Under the pieces are notes generated by a model that saw only the letters and a program-made list of their open reading frames with translations, had not been told where the DNA came from and searched no databases. From contig OZ281500.1 of NCBI GenBank assembly GCA_965637545.1, forward strand, positions 8,122,001 through 8,186,000: 64,000 nt of DNA, read 5' to 3'. The DNA comes from Phallusia mammillata (lineage: Eukaryota). Below are positions 32,015 to 64,000 of this stretch, piece by piece; position 1 is the stretch's first letter, and the number at the start of each line of letters is the position of its first letter. The position numbers were made by a program, and so were the translations under genes.

Positions 32015-35000
32015 TCACGGCTTTGTGCTCTTACGAGTCCCGGAGGTACTTCCACGACTGACCACAGTTTTCGTACAGCAATAAAACGACTGCAGAAGAC
32101 TAATAACCGCATAACGCAAGCCGTACATGTAGTAAACCAAAATAATTGGACTTGCCATGCCGTATATATACACTACAACAATGCCGAGCAATACGGCAGG
32201 CAGATTGAGTACGTAAGGGATGGTTACAATGTCGATGAAGATAGTGATCATTGAGGGTGCGGAGCATAGTATGAAGAGGACAGAGATAAGGATCATAGAC
32301 TTAATGCTGTGGCTAAGGTGGGAAAGTTTCGCTCTGCGGTGAGGAAGAGATTGTGTGTGTCCGTTTTTCTGCACGAAAAAGAAATGCTTTGGCGTTCACA
32401 TTCACAATCACAAACATTGATTATTATTTATTTGTGTGGTGAAAGTTAAATTTCTTCATCGTAATTATGTTTGCCAAAACTACCAAACTAATTCTGTCTT
32501 AATATTATTTTCAGCACAAACTAGTCAGAAAAAGAAACTTGTATTAGAACATCCATTCATAACTGGATCAGCTTTTGCATACATATTTGCATACATACGA
32601 ATATGTCACAGGTTTGGCGCAGAGTCTACGTTCCTTATGGTGACAAACATGCGACATTTCGACAACATTTTAAGAAAATTTAAAATAGAAATTTAGACTC
32701 CAAATTCTAGGCCCAAAAGCCATTTATGGAGTTGTACAAAGCTTACCACTGAGTTTCGTTTCGGACTTCCGCCTGTGAAAACGTTATCATCGTCCTGACT
32801 GTTGGTGCCTGCGGCAAAAAGAAACGAGTAAAGATATTTGCAATTCCAAAACCTGTATGAATATAGTCTATAACATTACGTTTTCAATGTTTGTTTAATA
32901 TCCCTATCTAACCAATATATCGCCAATCCCGCCCCAACAAAAATCATAAGAAAGGCTTAGTCACTGCATTTAAAGCGGCATTTCCTGATGTATTGTAGAA
33001 ATTCCTAGTTGTACAAATTTATGTTATGTGTTATATAATAAAATATTGAAATTTATTTATTTTCCTTCCCAATTCCTCTGCCACAAATTTCCTCACTGAA
33101 ATTAAAAATCCCTTGGTTAGAGAGCCAAGTGACCCCATTTGAGAACCACTGGTTTAGAAGATATTTAGTTTTGCGATTCACAGAAGTTACAACCATTTTT
33201 GTTACTTGATTAACCCGACTTTGTAGCGGTAGCCTTCTTGTATGATAAGGGACTCTTCTAGTTTTAAAATGACTAAAGTGTAATCAGTTTGGTATCAGAT
33301 ATTTTTCGGTTTTGCCTGGAAAGTTTTAAAAATAAAAGCGAAACCAAACTGTTTGGGTATGAAGTAATGCTCAAAGTTTTATATGCCTGATTTTCGCGTG
33401 ATTCATTAAAATCCATTATCTCTATAAAACAATATCGCAACGAAGAAATTGCCTTTTCTTGGTTGGTTTTTTGCAAAAGGCATGTTTCAAAGCGGTTTAC
33501 GTGTCCTTGGAAAATTCGGTTCAAAATATTCAACAATTGTACCGAATTTTGTAGAAGTAGTTTAACTTTTTTCTGATCGTTCGGTTTTAGTCCAACCTTT
33601 TAAAAGCGTCTTGGTACGTCTCGACTTGGGACATTGCAAAACCTAAACGTTTTGTCGGTCCATTAAGTTTGAATAATTGGAAATGAATGTAACAGAATTC
33701 TAACCGACGATGACGGCTTCTACATTTTCTTTCAACACGGACTAGTTATTGGTCACCTTTAATTCAAAAACTGTTGTACAACTCAACTTACCACCACTTT
33801 CAGCAACATAAGACACCGAAGTAATAGCAGTCGACCTTGGGAATCGAGCGCTCGTTGCACAACGGTATTTTCGGTATGTTGACACCATGGTGGCCAGAAG
33901 CACGATTGCCAAAAGAAGCCAGATGATTATTACAGTCAGCATGAAGCTGTTTGACATATTCTCAAACACCCGACTGCACTCCTTGTGTCTATCTGTAAAC
34001 GTTATTAGATTGAAGTGATTGTCGTTTTAATGCAAACCCACAAACAGAGGCCGCGCCTTCAGCTATAAATATAGAACCTAATTAGTTTGTTAGGAATGCG
34101 TGTGAGATTGGATTGATTCAGGCTGGCTTCAACGCCTTCAATGGGCCTGGCGTACTATGATCTACGTGATTTTCTTAATGTTATTGTTATGTTGTACTGG
34201 ACAACATTCAGATGTTAGTCCCGAATGCAGGTCGTCACAAAACATAAAGGTCACGATTTACGTCTTACTTATGGATCGTGTTTTTAGTTATAGCACGTAA
34301 GATCACAAATCAAGGGGATTGCAGCGTAATGCAACGATACACAGCATGTTAGCGGCTACAGAACGTGCAGCATTTTAACACACTTAGATCATTGTTGGCA
34401 ACTAAGTCTAACATACGTTGTCATGTCGATGATCGTGTAACCAAATATTTTTATTCTGTACTATTTTGTCTTTTGTTGTTGCACTGATATGTGCATTTTG
34501 TAACTTCGGCGATTTGTGATATGCGGCACACATAACGTGTATCTTTGCTGTGTGCCAACGGCTACCAGTGACGCTAAATGGCGTTATACGCACTGCTTTA
34601 GTAATCAGACATAAGAACGGCTTCCTGTTTTATAAAGTTGGTTTAATATACGTGTGGCTTGAGTGGCGTAAGGTATTGACTTCCTGAAGTTTTAACAAAG
34701 TTGCGAAACTAAACCAGAACAGTGTGCGAAACCGTTGCTGCACGGTTTTGTGACAAAATTAGGGAGACAAAGGGATTTATTGGCAAGAATAATGTTGCCG
34801 CCCACGACCGGTAAACCAAACCCCAGACTGCCAAGGTACTTCCGTAACAGTTGCTTCATATGTGGCTATTGAAATGATCAAAATCACAAAACAACAACAA
34901 GACTCACCTCCTTGGCAGATGTAATGCTCGGCGTAGTAAGCATCAAAACACTCGCACAGACTAAGGCAATTCCATTCTGTTGCTGCTACGATTGATAGAA

Positions 35001-45524: not shown

Positions 45525-46177
45525 CAGTGGTGGGATTCAACATTTTGTCAGCCGGTTCTATCACAAAAGTCATATTTTTCACCTTGTTCTGTTACAAAAA
45601 GTAACCAGTAATGCTAACCGGTTTGCTGGTCCAGAGTTGCAAGCGGGCCCGAAATCTGAGCCCGAACCCGGCCCGAACCCGAAAGTATAAGCCCGAAGCC
45701 CGACCCGAACCCGAAACGTCTTTGAGAAGCCCGTTTAGGCCCGAAATTTTGATTGACAGGTCTATCCACGAAAGCCTTGCAACAAAGTATGAGAAAGAAA
45801 AAAGAGAAAAGACAACAAACACAATGAACAATAGTAGACAATGGGGTAAACAATACGTTTTAGACCAGGGTGGGCATTCGATCAAAGCGAGAGAATTGTT
45901 ACTAAAAAATGACGGAAACGGAACGTAAAGTCAGGCCCGTTTTGAGCCCGTTTTCTGACAAATACCTAAGCCCGAACCCGGCCCGAACCCGGCCCGAACC
46001 CGGCCCGAACCCGGCCCGAACCCGGCCCGAACCCGGCCCGAACCCGGCCCGAACCCGGCCCGAACCCGGCCCGAACCCGGCCCGAACCCGGCCCGAACCC
46101 GAACCCGGCCCGAAAAGCCCGGCCCGACTTGCAACTCTGTGCTGGTCTCATAAAAATTCGTGAGACGGTTCTATAGA
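45525..46177. mobile_element. Second copy of the CAGTGGTGGGATTCA MITE, interrupted by a nested element; right TIR lost
   Basis: 45525-45631 and 46140-46177 align colinearly with 19621-19770. Confidence 0.85.
45632..46139. mobile_element. 508-bp hAT-type MITE with an internal 11-bp tandem array, nested insertion
   Basis: TIRs CAGAGTTGCAAG / CTTGCAACTCTG; perfect TSD TGCTGGTC; 12 copies of GCCCGAACCCG at 45970-46101. Confidence 0.93.
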
Positions 46178-49739: not shown

Positions 49740-52700
49740 ATGTTAACTGTATCTTTACTGTCACTATGTTACAAAACATATCCGGTCATTGTAGCAGAGG
49801 GGAGTAGAAACATAGAACACCAAGGCATTGATTTCGCCAGGGTTATGCCAAAGGGAAGGCAGAAACTAAAACCAAAAGTCATTGAGTCACAGTCTATCCA
49901 GAATGAAATTGTTAATGGTGATTTGTCAAAGATGGGCAACAACCAATCATTGTGGATTGATGGAGCGCGTTCTTGGCAAGCGTTAAACGCTTCTAGTACT
50001 GTTACAGGAAAAAACACGGGACCATTTCAAGCTTATTACATCACATGTAGGTATATGGTGTACATAAAATGCCCAAATGATTTCGTATACTGGTAGGCAC
50101 GTTTGGTATCACCTTTTTTTTAACTTTTTCAGCGTTTCCTTGCTCTAAATTGTGCTTGGGATGCCATTCGTGCTCCAACTATACCGGATCATGCATGTGT
50201 AGCTGTTACAATGGATTTACGTCAACAAGCGAAGGTGAATGTGAGCCAGGTAATATTGACATTTGTGTTATGATACTTGACCATAGCAGTTCGAGAATTT
50301 CCCGCCGTGATAAAGTTTGTTTTTGATTTTTTATTACTTTATTTGATTTTTTAAGTGTTTTTTTTTTCAATGTTAGCGAACTGATTAAGCGTTATTTTTT
50401 ATTTTATCTAGTTTACTGCCAAGGACATTCCATAAATTTTCCACAAGATACAAACATTGAGGTTTTGTTTCCAAGAACATTCGTTGGGTATAGAAATTTG
50501 TCGACAGACGTATGTCCTAGCGGCACCGTAAACAGTAAGTGTCAGCCGTATGAGTTCACTTTACAGCACATGCCGATCTGAAGCGAGTTTTTCTTCTTAC
50601 TAAACGTTGTAACAAAAAACGATGTACTTTGTTCACCTAATTCGACTCAATTACGATGTACGTTGAGCGTATATATCAGAGTTGCAAGTCGGGCCGGGTT
50701 CGGGTTCGGGCCGGGTTCTATAATATCACTCAGCTAAGTAACAATTCTCGAGCTTTGACCTAATGCCCACCCTACTCTAAAACGTATTGTTTACCCCATT
50801 GTCTACTATTGCTCATTGTGTTGGTTGTATTTTTTTCTTTCGCATCTTTTTTTGCAAGGCTTTCGTGGATAGGCCTGTCAATCAAAATTTCGGGCCTAAA
50901 CAGGCTTCTCAAAAACGTTTCGGGTTCGGGCCGGGTTCGGGCCGGGTTCGGGCCGGGTTCGGGCCGGGTTCGGGCCGGGTTCGGGCCGGGTTCGGGATCA
51001 GAATTCGGGCCCGCTTGCAACTCTGGTATATATAGTTTACTGTTTGATTTTGAAAATGAGTGATTAAATTAGTAACACGACCTTTAATTAAATCACCTCA
51101 TGTACCTTAAACCCCACTACTAAAATTATTATGCCCCCTACTCGCAATTTTTTCTGTCACTTTTTTAGTGTTACTTTGTGTTGTCGCAAGTTGAGTATCA
51201 TGACCAATTTCATTTCACTTTTGTCGGCTTGTTTTAAGGCGGAACACCCTATGCTATTCGAGAATGTCATTTGGATGGTTTTTGGGCTACCCCTGTGTGG
51301 TTATCATCATGTAATGCGCGGATTGAGGTTGGTTATCAGTTAAATGTTTTTTCTCAATCAGTCACAAACGATGTTTTATAAGGATTATCTTCACTCAACT
51401 ATAAACTCCAATGAACATCGACTTCAGGTGGCAAATGATCTGGAAGTAATGACATCACAACCAGTGCAACTACAAGCTTGCTTCATTACTGCTGTTTCGG
51501 AGATCCTTGCCAAAGTTGTGAATACACCAGTTTTGCCCATAAAGGTTTCGATATTTGTTCAAATTACTTAATTTAGGTAACATTTCTGCGTGGGCTTTAT
51601 AGGTTGCACAACTTTTTAATGCGACTGTTTTCTGTACAGAGTGCGCGAAAATGTGCACGTTAAAATGTGCGCACATTTTTCGAAAATTTTAGAGGCCAAA
51701 GTATATCTCAGTAAAACGAAGGCCATTGCCAAATTCTAAAGGTAAATTTGAAAAATCGTTTCGCCTTCTGTTGTTACTTGTAACTGAATGAAGTAATATT
51801 GTTCGACACAAAATATTTTTTACATTTAACATACATATACACTTATACAGTCGAACAACCTGACAAGTAATGATATTGTAGCAATTCGTCTAGGTTGTGG
51901 CGAAACGCCCTCCGAAAGTACTGCAAAATTACAACGTTTTCTTGAAAAACGTGATGGCTGAAAGACGATAATGCTTTAAGAAGGGAAGCTGAGATGGTCA
52001 AAGCAAATGTCTTCACAAGCCACTTTAACGATATATACTTTGTTTACGTATCTCGTGTTGTTTTCATAGCTTATGCCGTTTGTACGTTGATTAAACGGAC
52101 AAAATGGTTCATAGTTGCGTGGCTGTACGAGGATTTTTCATCGTTGACGCAAATCTACGGCATCTAGTTTATGCCACGTGTACATAATTACTTGATATAG
52201 TAATCTATCCATTCTAGTGTGTTTTGTCAAAATTTGGCCCCCGCTGAAAAAAATTCTGCCGGCGGCCTTGACTGTTATATGTAAACCATGTTAATTCAAA
52301 CACAATGCTTGTTTTCAAAGATTTCCAGCTCAGTCGCCGGGACAATCGGAAATATTTTAGATGCATCAGAGAAGGAAATTATAGCAAGCAAGCAATCAGA
52401 AAGGTTGAAACGTGATTGTAATTCACACCTTATCTCCTTTCGTGCTATGTCTCGTTACTACATAAGTTTAAACTAAACATAATTTAAACCAATTGTAGAT
52501 TGCTTGCAACTTTGCTTGCCTTGGGTGAAAACACGGAGCTGACTGAAGAGGAGTCGCGTTTGGACAAAGTTACGAAGTCCCTTGGTTTTTTTCTGTGTCC
52601 AATTTTGCATGGTTGTTTTTGCAAGTAATGCCAGCCAGTAAAGAAAATAACAAGCACCGTTTGCAGGATATTTTGACATTTATTTGGGTTTTATGCCCCG

Positions 52701-55700
52701 CCCCACACTACCAGCTGAGTTCGGATTTCGATTTGACCAATTTCATGCATTTTGGAACGATTACCCTCTCGGTGATGGTGCATCATACGTTGGATGTCCT
52801 CAAGAAGCTTGCGGCAAGTAAACGTTACCAACACGGCGATTTTTGCAAAATAGCAATTAAAAACTACCATATATATTTAAAGCAGAACTTTACCACTAAA
52901 CCATTATTTCTAAACGCAGATGGATATAGGACGCTATTTTACGCAATGCACGACGACAAGTTTTTTAAATCTGTCAGGCCTTATCAAAATCTAACATACG
53001 CTTCAGACGTTGTGTTATCAGTAAACGCTGTCGGAAAAAATACCACCAATATAACTTTGAAGTCGCCAATGAAAACGGAGTTTTCTCTGCAAAAGGTTTG
53101 TAAGAACTGTTTACTTCTGAACATACATTAATCCTCCAATGTAAACAGCCAAAATGCGTCTTACCAACTGGTGAATGGTCGAACTGACATTCCCCTTCTA
53201 CGAATATTACATGTGCAGCAAACAAGGCAGGCAACAGTGCTTATGGTACTACAGGCAGCAGACACAAAATATGTCTCTAATCCCCTTATTAAAAAATGCT
53301 AGAGTACAATACGTGATTCAGCTTTCGAAATTGCCTTCAATTTTATCAAACAGATATTTTTTTTCCATAATATTTTCAATTTGTGTATTTAGAAAAGCTG
53401 GTCTTAACAGAATATCCACACATTTTATTGACATGTACAGACCGATGCGATGGTTCGATTGAACGAAACTACATGTGGTTTTTGGGATTTATATGGGTGC
53501 TGGTCGACTGAAAAGGCCAGTGTTGTAGACATTACCAATCAATCTGTCACATGCGAGTTTTCTCAGTATGTCAGCACTTTCGCCGCATTTTCCGTAAGTA
53601 TTTTCCGGTTACATTGCAAAGTAGCAAATCGTTCAAAGTTAACAACCCCAAGTTTCTAGTACAACAGAGATCTTGCTGTTGCCACAGAAACAACGCACAT
53701 CAAAAGCTCACCCACCAAATTGTGCGACTGGACAATCACAAGTGAGTGTGCAAAATTTTCTTTGTGAACCTTCGTTTAAAAACAACTGGTTCTCTGAAAA
53801 CATTTGACAAAAGTTGATGTTTGTACTTCCCATCTTTCACAATCGATAAAATTCCATTCACTGTCAACTTAACGTCACAAAACATGAATTTAAACAAATC
53901 AGCTTCTTGCTATAATGCACAAATTTAAACAAAATACTATTGCTATAATGCACAAAAGCAGTGGTTAATAATTATTAGTTATAATTATAATCCGCAATAG
54001 CATCGTGTTTTTTAAATAGATAATTTTTAGGTACTTATTTTGTTCAACAACCCTTGCACAGTCTTGCACATCATAAGACACGTTAATTTTGTATTTTTGG
54101 ACTGATGTTAATAGTTCATCGTACTGTTTTACAGCTCGATGCGATGAAGTTTATGTTGTGTATCCATTTGATCAAAACATAAATGTTTGGTTTCCTTCGA
54201 CCGCCGCAGGATACTCAAATTCATCTTCAACTGTTTGTTCAACAAACACATTAAACTGTACGTGATCATTTTATTGAGTGACAATAACACCACTTTTGCT
54301 CACCACGTTAGTTCATCAGCAATGAACAAATTATGAAATGAACTATTTTAGATGGCAAACCATACGGTGTACGAGACTGCAGCATTAAAGCGGTTTGGGA
54401 AAAGCCAACATGGTTGTCGTCTTGTAATGTGCAGTTGAAGGTAACATTTGCTCTTTTTTGGTCTGTGTTAAAGCACACTTTTCAAAACCATTGCTATTTG
54501 TAAAAAAGGACTATGTAAACGCGACAATCGAAACAGAGGAAGGTCGGCAGCAGGTTGCAAACGATCTGGAAGTAATAACATCAGACCCGGGACAACTGCA
54601 AGCGGAAAGTCTTACGATCATCGTCGATGTTCTTGACCAAGTTGTCGATGCACCCACTTTAAGCAAAAATGTTCGGGTTTTACGAATAGTCGTGTATAGC
54701 TTATGTAGCTTACTGCAATAAATTTTTGTGAACTTAAAACCAATTACGTCTTTCCACTTAAAACTTAATTTCATGTTATGTCAGACGTCAAGTTCAGTTG
54801 TTGGCACAATTGGAAATATCTTGGAAGCACCTGAAGAAGAAATCAAGGCAAGCCACATTTCATGGAGGTAAGTTGAACAGTGATTTAACTATTGGTTAAG
54901 TTCTCTCATTTCTGTTCTTAACGGAAGAATAAATATATTTAACCGCAAACACTATGTAGAATGCTTGAAACTTTGGACACCGTGGCTGAAAAAGTAGAAT
55001 TAATAGAAGGAGAGAAGTTTGAAGAAGTGACAAGCTCTATGGCATTTGCTGTTGCTCAACCCTTTCTACAAGGTAATCTGCAATTGGCACCTCAATCGAT
55101 GTGATTATCAAAATCCTGATATCTGCAGATGCTCAATGTGGAATTGGTTACGAAGTTCTATCTATGACAAATGTTCAAGAACCTGGTTTTCGATCCGACC
55201 AATTGGACATTTTTTATGGTCAGTCGAGTGACAGAGCGACCTCATACATCAAAATTCCCTACCAAGCAAGTTTCCAGAGCTTAGGTAAACGCGCTTGTGA
55301 AATATTTGACTAATGTTAATTAAAAGCGGAAATTACATTGGTCAATATCATTTCCAAAGTGTTTTTAAGACAAAACCTTATAACGATCGTTTTTACTTGT
55401 ACAGGTACATATCGAACGAGCTTCTACGCAATGTCCGACGACAAACTTTTTTCCACTGCTGAAACCAATCAACGTCGGGGTGCAAATTTACAATACACTT
55501 CAAATGTCGTGTTATCAGCAACTGTTGTTGGAAGTAACGGCAAAGTTGGACATCTACAACAGCCTGTTGAAATACAATTTTCCTTAAAGGTGAGAACTTT
55601 CTTGGATCTGCTAATTGTCATCTGTTGCTGATCTGTAATGGTTTTTAACCCTTTTTAGACAAAAAATGCTCATATGTATGCAGACAAAAGCACGTATTGC

Positions 55701-57374
55701 GGTTTTTGGAATTTTGATGCTTGGTTAACAGACGGACTGTCGATTGCGAGAGTCGACAACCAAGCAATCACTTGTTACTCTAACCATCTTACCAATTTTG
55801 CTGCTTTGTTTGTGAGTTCAGTTGTTAAAGTCTTTAAAATGATAAACCATGTGAAAAACTTTTTTTTGAAAAAACTTAGAACAGTAACTACGTGGACTCG
55901 ACAGCGATTGACCTTATCACATTGGTTGGGTGTAGCATTTCCAGCGTATGTCTGATGATAACTGTTTTGGAGTTCATAATTTACAAGTACGCAAGAATAT
56001 GTGAACATTTCTATTTTGAAGTATTACCCAATATTCATTTTCCCTTTCAGACCCAGTCGAAAAGAAAAGAAATTTCGAAGTGCTTTTCTTCTTACTAATC
56101 TTTCCTTGTCACTTTTGTTTTTTAACGTCGACTTGATTCTCAGTGGACAGGATTTTGTGCAAAAATCAGTAAACGGCTGTCTATCGATTGCGGTCCTTAC
56201 ACACTTTTTTATGTTATCTTCGATGGGTTGGATGTTAGTGGAAGGCACTACTTTTTTTCTAGCTCTTGCATTCGTAAATATGCTTTGTTGTCGATACGAT
56301 ATAAATGCATTGTAGCTTTTCACAAACGATTATGTATTTTTTAGCCTTTTTGGTACAAAAGTTTACCGACATCTAAAACAATTTTGATCCCTGCTTGTAT
56401 TGTCGGGTGGCTGCTTCCAGCAGTTTTTGTTTCCTGCATTTTAGCTGTCAACAAAAGTCTATACATTCGCATAGACTATACGTAAGTATTGTAGATGATA
56501 AAGCACTATTACTATTTATAAAGTGGTAATTGTCCGATTTTTAGATGCTGGATACACGATGAATACTTGCTGTTCTTTGTCGCGATTCCTGTTTGCATTT
56601 TAATTGGCATAAACTTGATTCTTTACGTGATGATAGTTTATCATGTGATGTGCAAGCGAAACATAAAGGTATTAATACGCTTTGGGAATTTTGACTGATA
56701 AATAACTGAATATGTTGTCCGCTTTAGGGTTCAAATAACGGTAATCGATCCACACGAAACGCAATGATTTCACTCACGCTTTTCGTGACACTTGGTGGAA
56801 CTTGGCTATTTGCAATAGCACTTGTAGCATCAGACGAGGAACTGGTGGTGCTGGAAGTTTTCGCTTTCATATTTACAATATTAAACTCCCTACAAGGTTA
56901 GTATTTAATAGGTTATTAAATTATGTCAAAAGTATCTAATCATTCATGTAGACTCGCTTATAACAGCTACGCAGGTATGTTCACCTACTGATTACAATTT
57001 GTTGTTTGTGCACGTACCACGGTTTAAAAAAGTTTGCGTATTTTTTGTTTAATGATCTTTTACATTTATATAAAGGTTTGATATGATACAATCTTTAGGT
57101 GTTTGTCTTTTTGTTTTGTACGTGATGCGTCAAAACTATCTGGCAGAAATCGCACAACTGGTAAAAGCTCGAAGAGTCCTGTCGGTGTCGGGTCGGTATG
57201 TAGACTACTATTCGGCTTTCTTTTTTCATCGCAATATAAAATGTTTTTTTTTTACACTCTGTCCTATTACTTAGAAAACATGAAGATCTTCCATTGAAAG
57301 AAAGCAAAAACACTAAAATTGCGTTTTCGACATGTTCCTCGAGCAGCGGTTTTGAAACATCCATGACTAATTAA
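49740..57374 (+). CDS. Adhesion GPCR: C-type-lectin-like remnant, EGF-like domain, HRM-GAIN, linker, HRM-GAIN(GPS), 7TM; N-terminal start uncertain
   Basis: In-phase exons. EGF-like (CSKLCLGCHSCSNYTGSCMCSCYNGF). Module 1: 50412-50534, 51239-51327, 51383-51544, 52321-52403 … GPS 53441-53593. Linker 53660-53741. Module 2: 54135-54257, 54352-54440, 54509-54670, 54785-54867 … GPS 55659-55811 (CGFW…TCYSNHLTNFAALF). Family-2 7TM exons follow (ITLVGCSIS, HFFMLSSMGWMLVEG, GWLLPA, CWI, LGGTWLF, NSLQG), with stop at 57374. Confidence 0.85.
50677..51025. mobile_element. 349-bp copy of the CAGAGTTGCAAG MITE, inverted relative to 45632-46139, in an intron of the adhesion GPCR
   Basis: Same TIRs; perfect TSD GTATATAT; internal sequence aligns with copy 1; about 6-7 CGGGTTCGGGC units at 50921-50996. 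Confidence 0.93.
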
Positions 57375-59226: not shown

Positions 59227-62200
59227 TTATCGATTAGCTGCACGATCTCTATCTTTCAAAGATGGTCGAGGAATCTGGACAGCAAGAGACATCCAGTCCG
59301 ACACTTCAGTAGAAGGAATGGTGTAATTGGCACCTGACCTCGTGGCACCCATGTCACTCCTTGTTGACTGCTGTGGCTGCTTTTTGTTTGGGCCAACTTT
59401 GTGTCGCACGACAAACAGCAGGAACAGGAATAAACCTGAGGCACAAACGGGAAAGAGGCCATTAGGAAATATCACAATGCGTTTTGTTGGATGAGATAGA
59501 ACTGACTGTTCACATACAACACCATCCCGAACTCTAAGGATGACAATGCAATTGTTAACATACTATTCTTTTAAATATTAACCAGTAACAACACACTAAA
59601 TTATTTCTTCAAAGTACAGATTGGTTGTGCCAAGTGTTGGTAATAACGCGATATTTTCCAAGTTTGTTGTCTATAGTGAACAACTTAGTATTTAAGGGTT
59701 TACCTTGAAGGGAATTTAGTATTGCAAAAATGTATGCAAACACAGTGGCTAAGGTGTCCGATGTTCCAGAAAGCAAAACGATGGCAAAGATCCAGGTTCC
59801 ACCCATGGCCACAAACAAAGCAAGTGACAACAATAAGTCAGCCAGTCCGCGGTCCTGCCCTCTCGCAGCAGCCTGCAATGGCATTGTTCGGGTTGGACAT
59901 GTGTTAAACCAAAGCACGGATTATTTAGACACATGCCATAAACACGGAGTTTGTTTAATTAAGTCTGTTTTATAAGCCAGTATGTCATTGTTACATGTGA
60001 AAGTGTTTACGGTTCAGGCAAAATGTTGTTCATAACCTACCGGTCTGTGTCTCCTGCGCTGACGAAAGTAGAGGAACATGACGGCAATGTAAAGTGCCAG
60101 ATTTAGACCAATAATGATAGAGAATGGAATCACGACAAAGTAGATGATTCCACTTTCGGTAATCCAGCAACTAAATACATAAAATTCAAAACAACCGTTC
60201 ATAATTTGTCTGTTTCATTTCATAAGTTTTCTATAATATACTAATCCAAAAAGTAAACATTTTTTCAACCAATTTTCAGAACGTAACAAGGGGGTATGAA
60301 TTTGAATACAGCAAAACCAACCTCTGATATAAATGAAGTGATGCGTTAATTTACAAATATTTTATAAGACTTACATATCTCCATTGCGATAGGTTTCAGC
60401 ATCAACGCCAACCACTACAGAAACAAAAATCGCCGGCAGCAACCAAGCGCAGACAGTTGAGATTGCAAACAGATTTCTGTTCTTCATGCCACGGTTCATG
60501 TAAAAAGGCTAAAAACAAATGTTGTCAAAACTGTGTGGAACTTGGAAAAAACATTGCAACACAGCACCAAGCTAAGTTTATTTTCTTTTGTTATGGAGGC
60601 CAATTTAAAAGTGCAAACACAATTTCTAAATAATAATAGCATTAAAGTACATGGTTAACCATTAATAATGTTTGTAGAGGTAAGAGGTAGGTGGTTTCGC
60701 AGCACAGCGTCAGGGTGTTTAGCATTCGGTAAAAAAACAGTAAACATGCTCTTAGCACGAGCCTAAATATCACTTACGAAAGCGATTGTAATGAAAAACA
60801 TCACTCCTTCTACCAGCATCCAGGCCAGTGAGCTGAACATGAAGAAATGGATAAAAACTGCGATTGAAAGGCATGCGTCAGGGGACAAGTACACAAAATC
60901 CATCTCACTGAGCAGCATTGAAACGTTCAAAAGAAGAAGGGAGACGGCTAGATTTACCATTAGAAACGAGGTCCGACCTTTTCCTTGGGTGCGAGTTTTT
61001 CTGTGAAATTCAATTTGAATGTATCTCAATTTTGTTCTGAACCAATACTCTTACACTTTGTTAATTTTAAAACGCCTCATAGACTGGATAATTCTCTACA
61101 TAACAAGCAAGTTTAGTCAGTTAAAACGGAAGCACTTACTTGTCAAATGTGAACCAAAGTATAGTTGCGAGCAAAGCAAAAAGCGAGATCGAACAACCGA
61201 TAATCGTTATTAGATCCAATGCTCTTGAGTCATTGAAATTGGGATTCTGAAAGTGGTAACCAAGTTATAAAAATACATCAAACTATGATTGTTTGTGAGA
61301 CACTTACAAATAATGCTGCAAAGTTTGTCAAATGGGAAAATTCGCAAGTTATTGTGTTGTTCATCACTTCAGTCACACTGGCACCTTCTGTTGACCAATC
61401 GAGACCGTCCCAGAAGCCACAGCTGGTATTCAATTCACTGTAGGTTTGAGTCCCCTGTGATTTGATAAACGTTATGTGCCCGATACAGAATAATATACTT
61501 TGTGTTACCTGTGCTTGGAGAGCAAATTTCATTTCAACAGGTGGATTTAGGTCCTTGGTTGAGGTTGCGTTCGGCAACGAAGCCGAAAGAACTACTGACG
61601 AATTGTAAGTCCAGCCATTGCTTCCAGCACTTGGAAACAAGGCGTCATCAATAAGAGCGTAAAAACTGACGCGCTGGTTGTCTGTTTGTAACGTACAATA
61701 TGTCAAATGTTTGTGCATAAATTTAAAACTATCTTTGATTATTAAATTGGCGGTTATCCTACAATTGTGTGACGTCTAAACTCAAAATGTTTTGTTCACT
61801 TTTCAAATGGATGACAACATATATTACTTTTATACTTATCCCTAAATCGTTACTAATATAAATGGGATTTTTAGCCTGATTTAACACACAAGTAAAATCA
61901 TGTGTTTTGTTGTTTGCAAACCTCCACTTAACAAAGCTTGGGGTATGTTGATGTATGCAGAAAAATTTTCTGTAGATCCGTCATCAAATGTCGTTAGCTG
62001 ATCGGAACGAAACCCCAATTCTTGTAGGGTGCTTAAATCCAAAACACCGTAACCGACACCGACTGAACTCCGTAAACCTAAAAAACGCACGTTCAATTGA
62101 AAAAATACAAGTTTATTTTTAGTAGTCTTGCCTGCTGTGGTAGGTTCGACAACTGCCATGGCAAGGGTGCTCGTCACTTCTTGATACTGTCCAGTTTCGT

Positions 62201-64000
62201 CGAGTTCAACCTTTTCTCCAACCGTATCCAATGTGGTTAGAAGTCTGGTAAAGCATAAACAAATATAAAGCAGGGTTTTGTAAACAATTAAGCTTGTGCA
62301 TATTGCATGGGTATCATTGTTTATTGTTGAGTTGAGTTGCGTTTATTTAGCTTGGTTAATTAAAACATAGTTACACAACTGCACTCAAACAATCACCAAG
62401 CTGGCAATGCCAACGTCGAAACGTAATGGAGCGCAAAAACAGTGAAGGGCCAAATTGGTGGATCATAACTATAACCGCCATGCAGCTACACCATAATTTA
62501 AAGCGTTATGTGATGGGGGCTCACAAGAAAGTGAGTTTGACACACTGTGATTAAATCACGAAAACATTTACTTCAAATACACTTGTTAACAATCACTCAT
62601 CAACCACAACTATTTATGACAGGAAATTTAGAAAACCCCACTAACTTTTATTAAACACTATGAATATTCACCTTAAAAAGGCTAACAATCGCATTTTAGA
62701 TATCCATTACTTACTGTTCAGTTTGGTCGGAATCTTGTAATGATTCAGTTGGGGCAGAGAGTAAATTTCCCACCGTGTTAATGACAGACGACGATGTCTG
62801 CGAATATTTGTCTTTTAAATGCAAACAAATTACGTACATGACACTATTTGAAAATGCTCGTTAACTGCGTTGCAGCTAAAGTGAGGAAAATACACACTAA
62901 TCCCGAGCGCTTGTTTGTACAGAAATTAACTTTCTATGTAAGAAAATATAACATAAGCTAATCAATACATAAGCTATTGCTGCCAGGCATAATATCAAGT
63001 TTATAGAGCTCTTCTGGCAAATGTTATTTAATTTACATAAGTTACATTTGCCAGAAGAGCTCTATAAACTTGATAAGCTAATCAAAACTGGCAGTGTTTC
63101 TCGCCCGAGTAAAGCTATTAATTGAGTTCTTTTTTGGTGACAATCGTGTCCCCAGTATTGGTTACGCCTACAAATTCCCCATGTCATCCAAATAGCAATG
63201 ATTAAATTGTTCCAACAAAATTGGTGAGAAATTGCTGTTTGTATGGATACAAGGTGAAATCACTTATCCAGAAAGCTACCCGTGAACAAATACAAACACG
63301 ACTGAGTAATCTAACTTATGTTAAAATATATGTATTTGGGTCTAGACATTGGAAGCTTTAAATAGATTTTGTAGGACTAAAAAGAGTGTCACCGGCCTAG
63401 TAGCCATATGCATGCGACTTTTTGTAAGCCTATTGTGTGCAAAAATGCTAAAAAAAACACCATACGCGTCATAATATAGATCAGGGGTTCTTAACCAGGG
63501 GTGCACGCACCCCCAAGGGGTACGAGAACTGTTCCTTGGGGGGTGCGGGGAGACTAAATCATTAAGGTTGGTTAGGTCTGTTATATATAAATACAAATAC
63601 CCAGCGGGGTGCGAAAACTGGTTGGTAATTGTAAAGGGGTGCGAAAATTGGTTGGTGATTGGAAAGGGGTGCAGCAAGGAAAAAGGTTAAGAAGCACTGA
63701 TATAGATGGTGACTTCATAAATCATAAAGACTGATCGCTAGACTGCTTAACTCAATCTGTGCATCAATTAGAAATTAACCTGGGCTTTAGGTGCCATAAA
63801 TAGTACATATTTTAGATAAACCTATTTTTACAATCCATAGTGTGTTGACAATGTTTTGGAAGATAAAATAAAATATGTTAATGCTTGGGTTTTATGGTTT
63901 TACATACGTTTGCTGGAAGTGGATCAGGTGTATTTACAACGTTATCCAGCGCATTGACAATGTCGGTGACGTTTTCAGGTTGCAGATTTTCTGGTTCAGA
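59227..64000 (-). CDS. Second adhesion GPCR (GAIN-GPS-7TM), paralog of the + strand gene, convergent; 5' part lies beyond the window
   Basis: Exons include 64000-63908, 62797-62715 (83 nt, as in both modules of the neighbour) and GPS exon 61454-61308 (CGFWDGLDWSTEGASV…TCEFSHLTNFAALF). 7TM exons read ITIIGCSIS, HFFMFSSLAWMLVEG, AWLLPA, CWIT, MGGTWIF, NSLQG; stop at 59227. Confidence 0.9.
62993..63075. repeat. Perfect inverted repeat, 32-bp arms with 19-nt spacer, intronic
   Basis: TATCAAGTTTATAGAGCTCTTCTGGCAAATGT … ACATTTGCCAGAAGAGCTCTATAAACTTGATA. Confidence 0.95.
63482..63699. mobile_element. 218-bp hAT (Charlie/Buster-like) MITE in an intron of the minus-strand adhesion GPCR
   Basis: Imperfect TIRs CAGGGGTTCTTAACC / GGTTAAGAAGCACTG; perfect TSD ATATAGAT; repeated AGGGGTGCG subterminal motifs. 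Confidence 0.9.

What the first reader, a model, noticed from the sequence alone, without database searches (positions are those of the whole stretch)
50412..55811. Adhesion GPCR with two complete tandem HRM-GAIN modules in one reading frame
Seen: two exon series encode homologous HRM+GAIN modules (SGTPYAIRECHLDGFWATPVWLSSC vs YGKPYGVRDCSIKAVWEKPTWLSSC; QVANDLEVMTSQP vs QVANDLEVITSDP), with matching exon lengths 123/123, 89/89, 162/162, 83/83 and 153/153 nt. GPS exon 1 ends in phase 0. An 82-nt exon at 53660-53741 with canonical ttctag/gtgagt sites enters in phase 0 and exits in phase 1, the phase the second HRM exon needs. No stop, signal peptide or 7TM exons lie in the roughly 540 nt between modules. 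Established: adhesion GPCRs normally carry one GAIN domain directly before TM1. Inference: this is a double-GAIN receptor, an architecture I do not know from characterised aGPCRs.
Basis: partly seen in the sequence, partly recalled or inferred. Interest (0 to 1): 0.9.

Follow-up and report, generated by a model that had tools for sequence, protein, structure and literature searches.

The report
Adhesion GPCR gene with duplicated GAIN
A sea-squirt-type adhesion receptor gene carries two diverged copies of its eight-exon HormR+GAIN block ahead of a single seven-helix membrane domain; selection has kept both copies readable, so a receptor with two GAIN domains is plausible and would be new, but no transcript shows that the two copies are joined in one protein.

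Summary
Two homologous eight-exon modules (50412-53593 and 54135-55811) share 44% amino-acid identity. Six exon lengths and all intron phases match. Each module matches the family's HormR+GAIN profile end to end. An EGF-like exon precedes them and an intact 7TM follows.

Module 1 stays in frame only if exon 6 uses a non-canonical GC donor (GCAAGT at 52814) or a truncating upstream GT. The ancestral GT at 52818 shifts the frame into stops.

The 82-nt linker exists as described, but it is one of 17 phase-compatible open AG..GT candidates in the gap.

Neutral simulations, retained splice sites and exon lengths show module 1 was kept coding by selection. It evolves about three times faster than module 2. 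It alone has lost the family-invariant HLTNFATLF cleavage and agonist motif.

All detectable homologues (Clavelina, Ciona, Styela) have one module. The literature states that GAIN always abuts TM1.

Four RNA contig sets of this species show no expression, so the join is untested.

Best reading, about 45%: a distal uncleavable GAIN and a proximal cleavable GAIN in one receptor. Rivals are alternative block use, a soluble isoform, or a recently dead copy. This scan had already noted the distal GPS change on this same window.

The parts
50133..50249 (+). EGF-like Cys-rich exon (117 nt, phase 1 in and 1 out) that precedes the HormR exon in all family members
   Evidence: Translation FPCSKLCLGCHSCSNYTGSCMCSCYNGFTSTSEGECEP; tblastn match to P0001 residues 370-405
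50412..50534 (+). Module 1 exon 1 (123 nt, phase 1 to 1), first half of the HormR-like domain
   Evidence: weak Pfam GPR128_N hit, E = 0.028
51239..51327 (+). Module 1 exon 2 (89 nt), second half of the HormR-like domain (…GTPYAIRECHLDGFWATPVWLSSC)
51383..51544 (+). Module 1 exon 3 (162 nt), start of GAIN subdomain A (QVANDLEVMTSQP)
   Evidence: Pfam GPR128_GAIN_subdomA, E = 0.0032; 50% identical to the module 2 exon
52321..52403 (+). Module 1 exon 4 (83 nt)
52499..52611 (+). Module 1 exon 5 (113 nt)
52667..52813 (+). Module 1 exon 6 (147 nt), ended at the frame-preserving GC donor GCAAGT (52814-52819); the ancestral GT at 52818 would give 151 nt and a frameshift
52920..53095 (+). Module 1 exon 7 (176 nt), GAIN subdomain B
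53441..53593 (+). Module 1 exon 8 (153 nt), GPS exon with YV/S in place of HL/T (…TCEFSQYVSTFAAFS); strong donor TCC|GTAAGT
   Evidence: Pfam GPS, E = 0.026, below the family cut-off; alignment; donor
53660..53741 (+). Candidate 82-nt linker exon (phase 0 to 1; YNRDLAVATETTHIKSSPTKLCDWTIT). Hypothetical: best donor among 17 phase-compatible candidates
54135..54257 (+). Module 2 exon 1 (123 nt, phase 1 to 1)
54352..54440 (+). Module 2 exon 2 (89 nt)
54509..54670 (+). Module 2 exon 3 (162 nt), GAIN subdomain A
   Evidence: Pfam GPR128_GAIN_subdomA, E = 0.0021
54785..54867 (+). Module 2 exon 4 (83 nt)
54960..55072 (+). Module 2 exon 5 (113 nt)
55129..55284 (+). Module 2 exon 6 (156 nt)
55405..55589 (+). 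Module 2 exon 7 (185 nt)
55659..55811 (+). Module 2 exon 8 (153 nt), canonical GPS with the HL/T site and tethered-agonist strand (CYSNHLTNFAALF)
   Evidence: Pfam GPS, E = 4.6e-08, 33.9 bits, above the family cut-off
55880..57160 (+). Six 7TM exons (55880-55986, 56051-56273, 56345-56481, 56545-56668, 56728-56896, 57099-57160), open from TM1 to TM7; the C-terminal end is not defined
   Evidence: Pfam 7tm_2, E = 6.6e-07 on exon 2; tblastn with P0001

Best explanation
This is a tunicate member of the ADGRG7/GPR128-like adhesion GPCR family. Its eight-exon HormR+GAIN block was duplicated in tandem, or a tandem gene pair lost the first copy's 7TM. Both copies lie between one EGF-like exon and one set of 7TM exons.

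Most likely both blocks are spliced into the same mRNA, at least in some isoforms. The join would be a short 3n+1 bridge: the 82-nt exon 53660-53741 or the +4 alternative donor at 53598. The product would be EGF - HormR1 - GAIN1 - short Ser/Thr-rich linker - HormR2 - GAIN2 - 7TM.

GAIN2 keeps the HL/T autoproteolysis site and the TNFAALF tethered agonist next to TM1, so it should work as in any adhesion GPCR. GAIN1 has YV/S instead, so it is probably not cleaved. It would serve as an extra uncleaved structural, ligand-binding or force-bearing module of the N-terminal fragment.

Shown: the two complete modules, their homology, selection on module 1's reading frame, its lost cleavage motif, and the intact 7TM.

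Inferred: use of the GC donor at 52814, use of a linker, and co-inclusion of both blocks.
For: Each module matches the family profile full length in the spliced model, which has no stop over 1043 residues.

Module 1 has been held open by selection. Neutral simulations give 8-16 stops in 348 codons and P(no stop) < 1/2000 even at 0.15 substitutions per site, while the M1-M2 distance is about 0.6. Six of eight exon lengths are identical although the introns differ greatly in length. All 8 AG acceptors and 7 of 8 GT donors are retained at homologous positions. Third codon positions differ more than first and second positions; NG86 dN/dS is about 0.28.

Module 1 is sister to module 2 (support 96/93) and has a 3-fold longer branch. 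It keeps 72 of 107 family-conserved positions, mostly with conservative changes. It has changed 7 of 9 residues of the HLTNFATLF motif, which is invariant in the other 11 sequences compared. That is expected if its last strand no longer serves cleavage or agonism next to a 7TM.

The module 1 GPS exon keeps a strong donor (GTAAGT) and module 2 exon 1 a good acceptor. The gap holds no first exon with a signal peptide and no poly(A) hexamer.

The frame-saving donor is an exact GCAAGT. The neighbouring paralogue also needs a GC donor at a conserved exon end, so GC-AG introns appear to be used in this family.

The linker candidate has the best donor in the gap, 7 of 9 matches to the consensus.

Skipping eight well-defined exons en bloc is mechanistically harder than including them. 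This last point is my inference from general knowledge of exon definition.
Against: There is no transcript evidence. Four RNA contig sets of the species cover only intronic repeats, and no RNA run holds the junction region.

Continuity needs a non-canonical GC donor; the ancestral GT gives a frameshift.

The linker is one of 17 chance-level candidates and shows no detectable homology to anything.

Each block alone is phase-compatible with the EGF exon (phase 1) and the TM1 exon (phase 0), so single-block isoforms are equally legal.

Five of 8 module 1 donors have T at +3, against 3 of 19 in the other exons (p = 0.027).

All 19 detectable homologues are single-module, and in them module and 7TM co-diverge.

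A decayed partial copy of such a module lies upstream of a Ciona gene, so duplicated modules can be junk.
Confidence: 0.45

Rival explanations
1. Alternative block usage: transcripts contain either module 1 or module 2, never both, and both join the same 7TM. Including both blocks or neither shifts the frame, and nonsense-mediated decay (NMD) removes those products. This gives two single-GAIN receptors, one cleavable and one not.
For: Both blocks are phase 1 in, phase 0 out and 3n+2 nt long. They match the EGF donor and the TM1 acceptor exactly. Tandem exon duplication commonly yields mutually exclusive exons (general knowledge). Weaker module 1 donors fit regulated inclusion. The linker is not statistically distinguished from chance candidates.
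Against: It requires coordinated skipping of eight consecutive exons with normal splice sites, for which I know no precedent. Module 1 has lost 7 of 9 residues of the motif that is invariant in every family member whose GAIN abuts a 7TM. That is hard to reconcile with module 1 acting as a tethered-agonist donor for the same 7TM.
Confidence: 0.2
2. Module 1 is a recently inactivated relic. It was functional for most of its history, but a roughly 5-nt change near the exon 6 donor has now broken the frame. The exons are skipped, or their inclusion leads to decay, and the working receptor has only module 2.
For: With the ancestral GT donor the frame breaks. Module 1 has a 3-fold longer branch and has lost 35 of 107 conserved positions. 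Its donors are weak. No expression was detected. A decayed module fragment occurs in a Ciona relative.
Against: There is only one possible lesion, and an exact GCAAGT sits at the one position that keeps every conserved residue in frame. The two exons downstream of the lesion (109 codons) are still open and conserved. All acceptors and donors are retained. A GC donor is needed in the intact neighbouring paralogue too.
Confidence: 0.2
3. Module 1 ends a soluble isoform. Transcripts that include module 1 terminate in the gap and encode a secreted EGF-HormR-GAIN protein without a 7TM. Receptor transcripts skip module 1.
For: Reading through the module 1 GPS donor gives a stop after 21 codons (TAG at 53657-53659). 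The loss of the cleavage and agonist motif fits a GAIN that never sits next to a 7TM.
Against: There is no AATAAA or ATTAAA in the 540-nt gap. The GPS exon keeps a strong GTAAGT donor, which a terminal exon would not need. This reading still needs eight-exon skipping for the receptor form.
Confidence: 0.1

Closest known systems
Tunicate 'adhesion G-protein coupled receptor G7-like' proteins (Clavelina lepadiformis P0001/P0006-P0016, Ciona intestinalis P0018, Styela clava P0021)
   Same: They share the EGF-like Cys-rich exon, the HormR-like domain (Pfam GPR128_N), GAIN (GPR128_GAIN_subdomA plus GPS) and 7tm_2. Module 2 is 42-45% identical to their modules and module 1 is 32-35% identical.
   Different: All of them have exactly one module, directly before TM1 and carrying HLTNFATLF. 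In them the module and the 7TM co-duplicate as whole genes. Here two modules precede a single 7TM.
HormR-GAIN adhesion GPCR ectodomains with solved structures (Gpr126/ADGRG6 6v55, BAI3 4dlo, latrophilin-1 4dlq, BAI2 8oek, ADGRL3 8vti)
   Same: The AlphaFold model of the family module (pLDDT 84, pTM 0.87) aligns with them over about 370-400 columns. Foldseek E-values range from 3e-17 to 5e-10, probability 1.00.
   Different: Sequence identity is only 14-21%. Those receptors have one GAIN abutting TM1. Araç et al. 2012 (PMC3321182) state that all GAIN domains analysed always immediately precede the first TM helix.
Naturally uncleaved GAIN domains (e.g. BAI2/BAI3 GAIN seen uncleaved; review PMC13197933)
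   Same: Module 1 keeps the GAIN scaffold residues but lacks the His-Leu|Thr catalytic triad (YV|S).
   Different: Known uncleaved GAINs are still the membrane-proximal GAIN and still carry the tethered agonist for their own 7TM. Module 1 would lie about 390 residues away from TM1.

Membership tests
Adhesion GPCR (class B2), for the gene as a whole | 7tm_2-type seven-helix domain | tested here: met
   Six exons open from TM1 to TM7. Pfam 7tm_2 E = 6.6e-07 on exon 56052-56273. Collinear with P0001 residues 767-1021.
Adhesion GPCR (class B2), for the gene as a whole | A GAIN domain with a GPS motif immediately N-terminal to TM1 | tested here: met
   Module 2 GPS exon: Pfam GPS 33.9 bits, above the 22.5 cut-off. 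CYSNHLTNFAALF is followed directly by the TM1 exon.
GAIN domain, module 2 | Full-length subdomain A plus B architecture and the HL|T/S cleavage triad | tested here: met
   Family profile positions 6-360 of 362, 379 bits. HL|T present. The homologue's model has the HormR-GAIN fold. Module 2 itself was not modelled.
GAIN domain, module 1 | Full-length subdomain A plus B architecture | tested here: met
   Family profile positions 1-355 of 362, 259.7 bits, E = 1.8e-81. 72 of 107 family-conserved columns kept. This depends on the GC donor at 52814.
GAIN domain, module 1 | GPS motif reaching Pfam's curated score, and the HL|T/S triad | tested here: not met
   Pfam GPS 15.5 bits, below the 22.5 cut-off. 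The sequence is Y-V|S in place of H-L|T.
GAIN domain, module 1 | Position immediately before the first TM helix (Araç et al. 2012) | tested here: not met
   In the genome, the linker region and all of module 2 lie between it and the TM1 exon. It would abut TM1 only in a hypothetical isoform that skips module 2.
HormR / HRM domain (both modules) | Pfam HRM (PF02793) match | tested here: not met
   No HRM hit at E <= 1 on single exons. There is only a weak GPR128_N hit on module 1 exon 1 (E = 0.028) and on the homologue P0001 (23.6 bits, below the 27.2 cut-off). The spliced modules could not be submitted to Pfam.
HormR / HRM domain (both modules) | HormR fold N-terminal to GAIN | tested here: inconclusive
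   The homologue's model aligns over its whole length with HormR-GAIN crystal structures. The four Cys and two Trp are conserved in both window modules. The window modules themselves were not modelled.
   No RNA coverage of any exon in four RNA contig sets. No RNA run holds 52920-54257. This genome's ORFs are absent from the protein collection.

The most novel reading that the evidence does not exclude
A naturally occurring adhesion GPCR with two complete HormR-GAIN units in series. The distal GAIN is kept by selection but freed from autoproteolysis and agonist duty, and the proximal GAIN is canonical. This would be the first exception to the rule that a GAIN domain always abuts the first transmembrane helix, and a natural experiment separating GAIN's scaffold role from its cleavage and agonist role.
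Probability: 0.45. Interest if true: 0.75.

Novelty: new variant of a known kind. Interest (0 to 1): 0.55.

Why it matters
GAIN is the defining extracellular domain of adhesion GPCRs. It has been reported only directly in front of the first membrane helix, where it hides the tethered agonist. A GAIN copy kept by selection away from the membrane, with its cleavage and agonist motif dissolved but its scaffold conserved, would show which GAIN residues serve the fold and which serve signalling. It would also show that GAIN can act as an ordinary extracellular module.

Even the rival readings have interest. Block-wise alternative use, or a soluble GAIN isoform, would be unusual gene-structure solutions. 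The locus also illustrates how a phase-asymmetric exon-block duplication (3n+2) can be rescued by a 3n+1 bridge and by a GT-to-GC donor shift.

The value is limited for now by the complete lack of transcript evidence.

Tried and rejected
1. RNA evidence. Two run searches found only DNA-like holders. Laying four RNA contig sets on 50100-56099 gave coverage only on an intronic MITE/satellite and two short intronic patches, plus one 65-nt 95% match in module 2 exon 7 that does not respect the exon boundary. So there is no support either way.

2. Finding this locus's own or orthologous proteins. A profile search of 1.84 billion representatives with exon 7 gave one true hit. A word search with the module 1 GPS ORF gave nothing. 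This genome is not in the protein collections.

3. Double-module homologues. None among 19 family proteups of up to 1800 aa, with candidate lengths allowed up to 2588 aa.

4. Clavelina 'isoforms' as alternative cassettes. Rejected: 7TM identity tracks module identity, so they are separate genes.

5. Origin of the linker from the EGF exon or the TM1 exon. No similarity above shuffles at DNA or protein level.

6. An independent first exon or a poly(A) site in the gap. None found.

7. Rescue of the exon 6/7 frame by an alternative exon 7 acceptor. I read the intron by eye: the two phase-2 acceptors run into a TAA. No tool was run for this.

8. Upstream 5' exons. No Pfam hits on ORFs at 46.9-50.1 kb or on other large ORFs. 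The gene's 5' end remains undefined.

9. Literature. No paper in the library mentions two, tandem or additional GAIN or GPS domains.

10. Left out: Pfam scan and AlphaFold of the spliced window protein. A local family HMM and a homologue's model were used instead.
Full report
**Anatomy.** The window is AT-rich eukaryotic DNA with short introns. On the + strand I rebuilt the exon chain by splice sites, phase and homology.
- An EGF-like exon lies at 50133-50249 (phase 1 to 1).
- Module 1 has eight exons of 123, 89, 162, 83, 113, 147, 176 and 153 nt (50412-53593).
- A 541-nt gap follows.
- Module 2 has eight exons of 123, 89, 162, 83, 113, 156, 185 and 153 nt (54135-55811).
- Six 7TM exons follow at 55880-57160.

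The phases of the two modules are identical, 1 in and 0 out. The module proteins share 44% identity (148/338; z = 39 against shuffles). Exon nucleotide identity is 51-66%, so this is an old duplication and not an assembly artefact.

**Identity of the module.** Single exons give weak Pfam hits to GPR128_N, GPR128_GAIN_subdomA, GPS and 7tm_2.
- A profile search with exon 7 found one true homologue, P0001. Word searches with it and with P0017 found 19 relatives, all tunicate: Clavelina lepadiformis, Ciona intestinalis, Styela clava. Most are named 'adhesion G-protein coupled receptor G7-like'.
- Their architecture is a variable N-terminus (mucin-like, FN3 or CUB), then an EGF-like exon, one module and a 7TM.
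- An AlphaFold model of the P0001 module (pLDDT 84, pTM 0.87) matches solved HormR-GAIN ectodomains over its whole length: Gpr126, BAI3, latrophilin-1, BAI2, ADGRL3, with E-values from 3e-17 to 5e-10.
- A profile built from ten family modules hits my spliced model (1043 residues, no stop) twice and full length: 259.7 bits for module 1 and 379.2 bits for module 2.

So 'two complete HormR-like + GAIN modules' is confirmed.

With the exon 6 donor homologous to module 2's (GT at 52818), module 1's exon 6 is 151 nt. The frame then shifts and stops appear immediately in exon 7. The frame is kept by a GC donor four bases upstream (GCG|GCAAGT, exon end 52813). That donor retains all conserved residues. 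Weak GT donors further upstream also keep the frame, but they delete 6-14 conserved codons. Three points argue that the GC donor is real:
- It is an exact GCAAGT, a hexamer seen about once per 3.8 kb in this window.
- The 109 codons downstream of it remain open and conserved.
- The neighbouring paralogue on the minus strand needs a GC donor (CAG|GCAAGA) at the conserved end of its own 113-nt exon 5.

It nevertheless remains an inference.

**Is module 1 alive?**
- Neutral simulations starting from module 2's coding sequence give 8-16 stop codons and P(no stop) < 1/2000 at 0.15-0.45 substitutions per site. The observed M1-M2 distance is about 0.6.
- Six exon lengths are unchanged, while intron lengths differ up to seven-fold.
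- All acceptors and 7 of 8 GT donors sit at homologous positions.
- Third codon positions differ more than first and second positions, and NG86 dN/dS is about 0.28.

Module 1 has therefore been translated for essentially all of its history.

In the tree, module 1 is sister to module 2 (96/93). The neighbouring paralogue M3 is their outgroup (97/97). Module 1's branch is three times longer, 1.77 against 0.56. Module 1 keeps 72 of 107 family-conserved columns, against 88 of 107 for module 2, and most of its changes are conservative. The family-invariant HLTNFATLF is YVSTFAAFS in module 1, with 7 of 9 residues changed. This agrees with the earlier scan note s1-358929. It is what one expects if this GAIN no longer cleaves or supplies a tethered agonist.

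**How could the two modules be connected?** Each block is 3n+2 nt. The following combinations keep the frame:
- EGF > M1 > TM1.
- EGF > M2 > TM1.
- EGF > M1 > (a 3n+1 bridge) > M2 > TM1.

M1 > M2 joined directly does not keep the frame.

It is, however, one of 17 open phase-compatible AG..GT candidates. It has no detectable homology to the EGF or TM1 exons. A second route is the tandem donor GTAAGTATTT: using the GT at 53598 gives phase 1 and joins M1 straight to M2.

The gap holds no ATG-plus-signal-peptide first exon and no AATAAA or ATTAAA. The M1 GPS exon keeps a strong donor and M2 exon 1 a good acceptor. Because en-bloc skipping of eight well-defined exons is hard to arrange, I consider co-inclusion the most likely state in which selection could have kept module 1 open. 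This is an inference.

**Evidence against co-inclusion.**
- There is no RNA support. No RNA run holds the region, and four RNA contig sets cover only intronic repeats.
- Module 1 donors are weaker: T at +3 in 5 of 8, against 3 of 19 elsewhere (p = 0.027).
- All homologues are single-module, and in them the 7TM co-diverges with the module, so duplication normally involves whole genes.
- A Ciona locus carries a frame-shifted fragment of such a module upstream of a single-module gene. Duplicated modules can therefore simply decay.

**Comparison with what is known.** Araç et al. [quoted passage not shown] The 2026 Pharmacological Reviews article and other papers in the library contain no mention of two, tandem or additional GAIN or GPS domains. 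The Ciona GPCR survey reports single GPS domains. A protein with a distal GAIN would thus be a new variant of a known receptor kind.

**Verdict.**
It is real, but it depends on a GC donor and on an unproven linker.
It is plausible and is the best single reading at about 45%, but it is untested at the RNA level.
- The rivals are alternative block use (about 20%), a recently dead module 1 (about 20%) and a soluble module 1 isoform (about 10%).
- The gene's 5' end was not found.

The spliced window protein could not be given to Pfam or AlphaFold, because it has no reference.

Noticed in passing
window 50670-51032 (also about 45600-46170): A MITE-like element with 32-nt terminal inverted repeats and an internal GGGTTCGGGCC satellite sits inside module 1 intron 1. 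The same satellite occurs about 5 kb upstream. Related copies are abundant in the species' RNA contig sets, with depths in the hundreds.
   Followed up: partly
window 59700-64000, minus strand: A tail-to-tail paralogous adhesion GPCR. Its 7TM exons run 61231 down to 59700 and its GPS exon is 61454-61308, with intact HLTNFAALF. Its GAIN exons reach the window end. Its 113-nt exon 5 stays in frame only with a GC donor (CAG|GCAAGA after 62132).
   Followed up: partly
window 53594-53603: Tandem donor GTAAGTATTT at the module 1 GPS exon. The second GT (53598) would shift the exon to phase 1 and splice module 1 directly to module 2 exon 1 in frame, without a linker exon.
   Followed up: partly
L001:8716-9347 (Ciona intestinalis AP043568.1): Upstream of a single-module family gene (P0020) lie a frame-shifted HormR-like fragment and an open GPS-like ORF ending in HLTNFATL. 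This is a decayed partial module copy in a relative.
   Followed up: partly
window 34157-34261, plus strand: An ATG-initiated ORF starts with a good hydrophobic signal-peptide-like stretch (MIYVIFLMLLLCCTG…), 16 kb upstream of the EGF exon. It is not assignable to this gene and has no Pfam hit.
   Followed up: no
window 55419-55483: One 239-nt RNA contig (run X5) matches 65 nt of module 2 exon 7 at 95% but does not start at the exon boundary, and the rest of it lies nowhere in the stretch. It probably comes from a paralogue's transcript.
   Followed up: no
window 55659-55811 and 61454-61308: The GPS motifs of module 2 and of the neighbouring paralogue have only two cysteines, so one disulfide pair is lost, as in the Clavelina and Ciona members. 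Styela keeps four. This echoes an earlier scan note on a GPS about 5 kb beyond the window end.
   Followed up: partly
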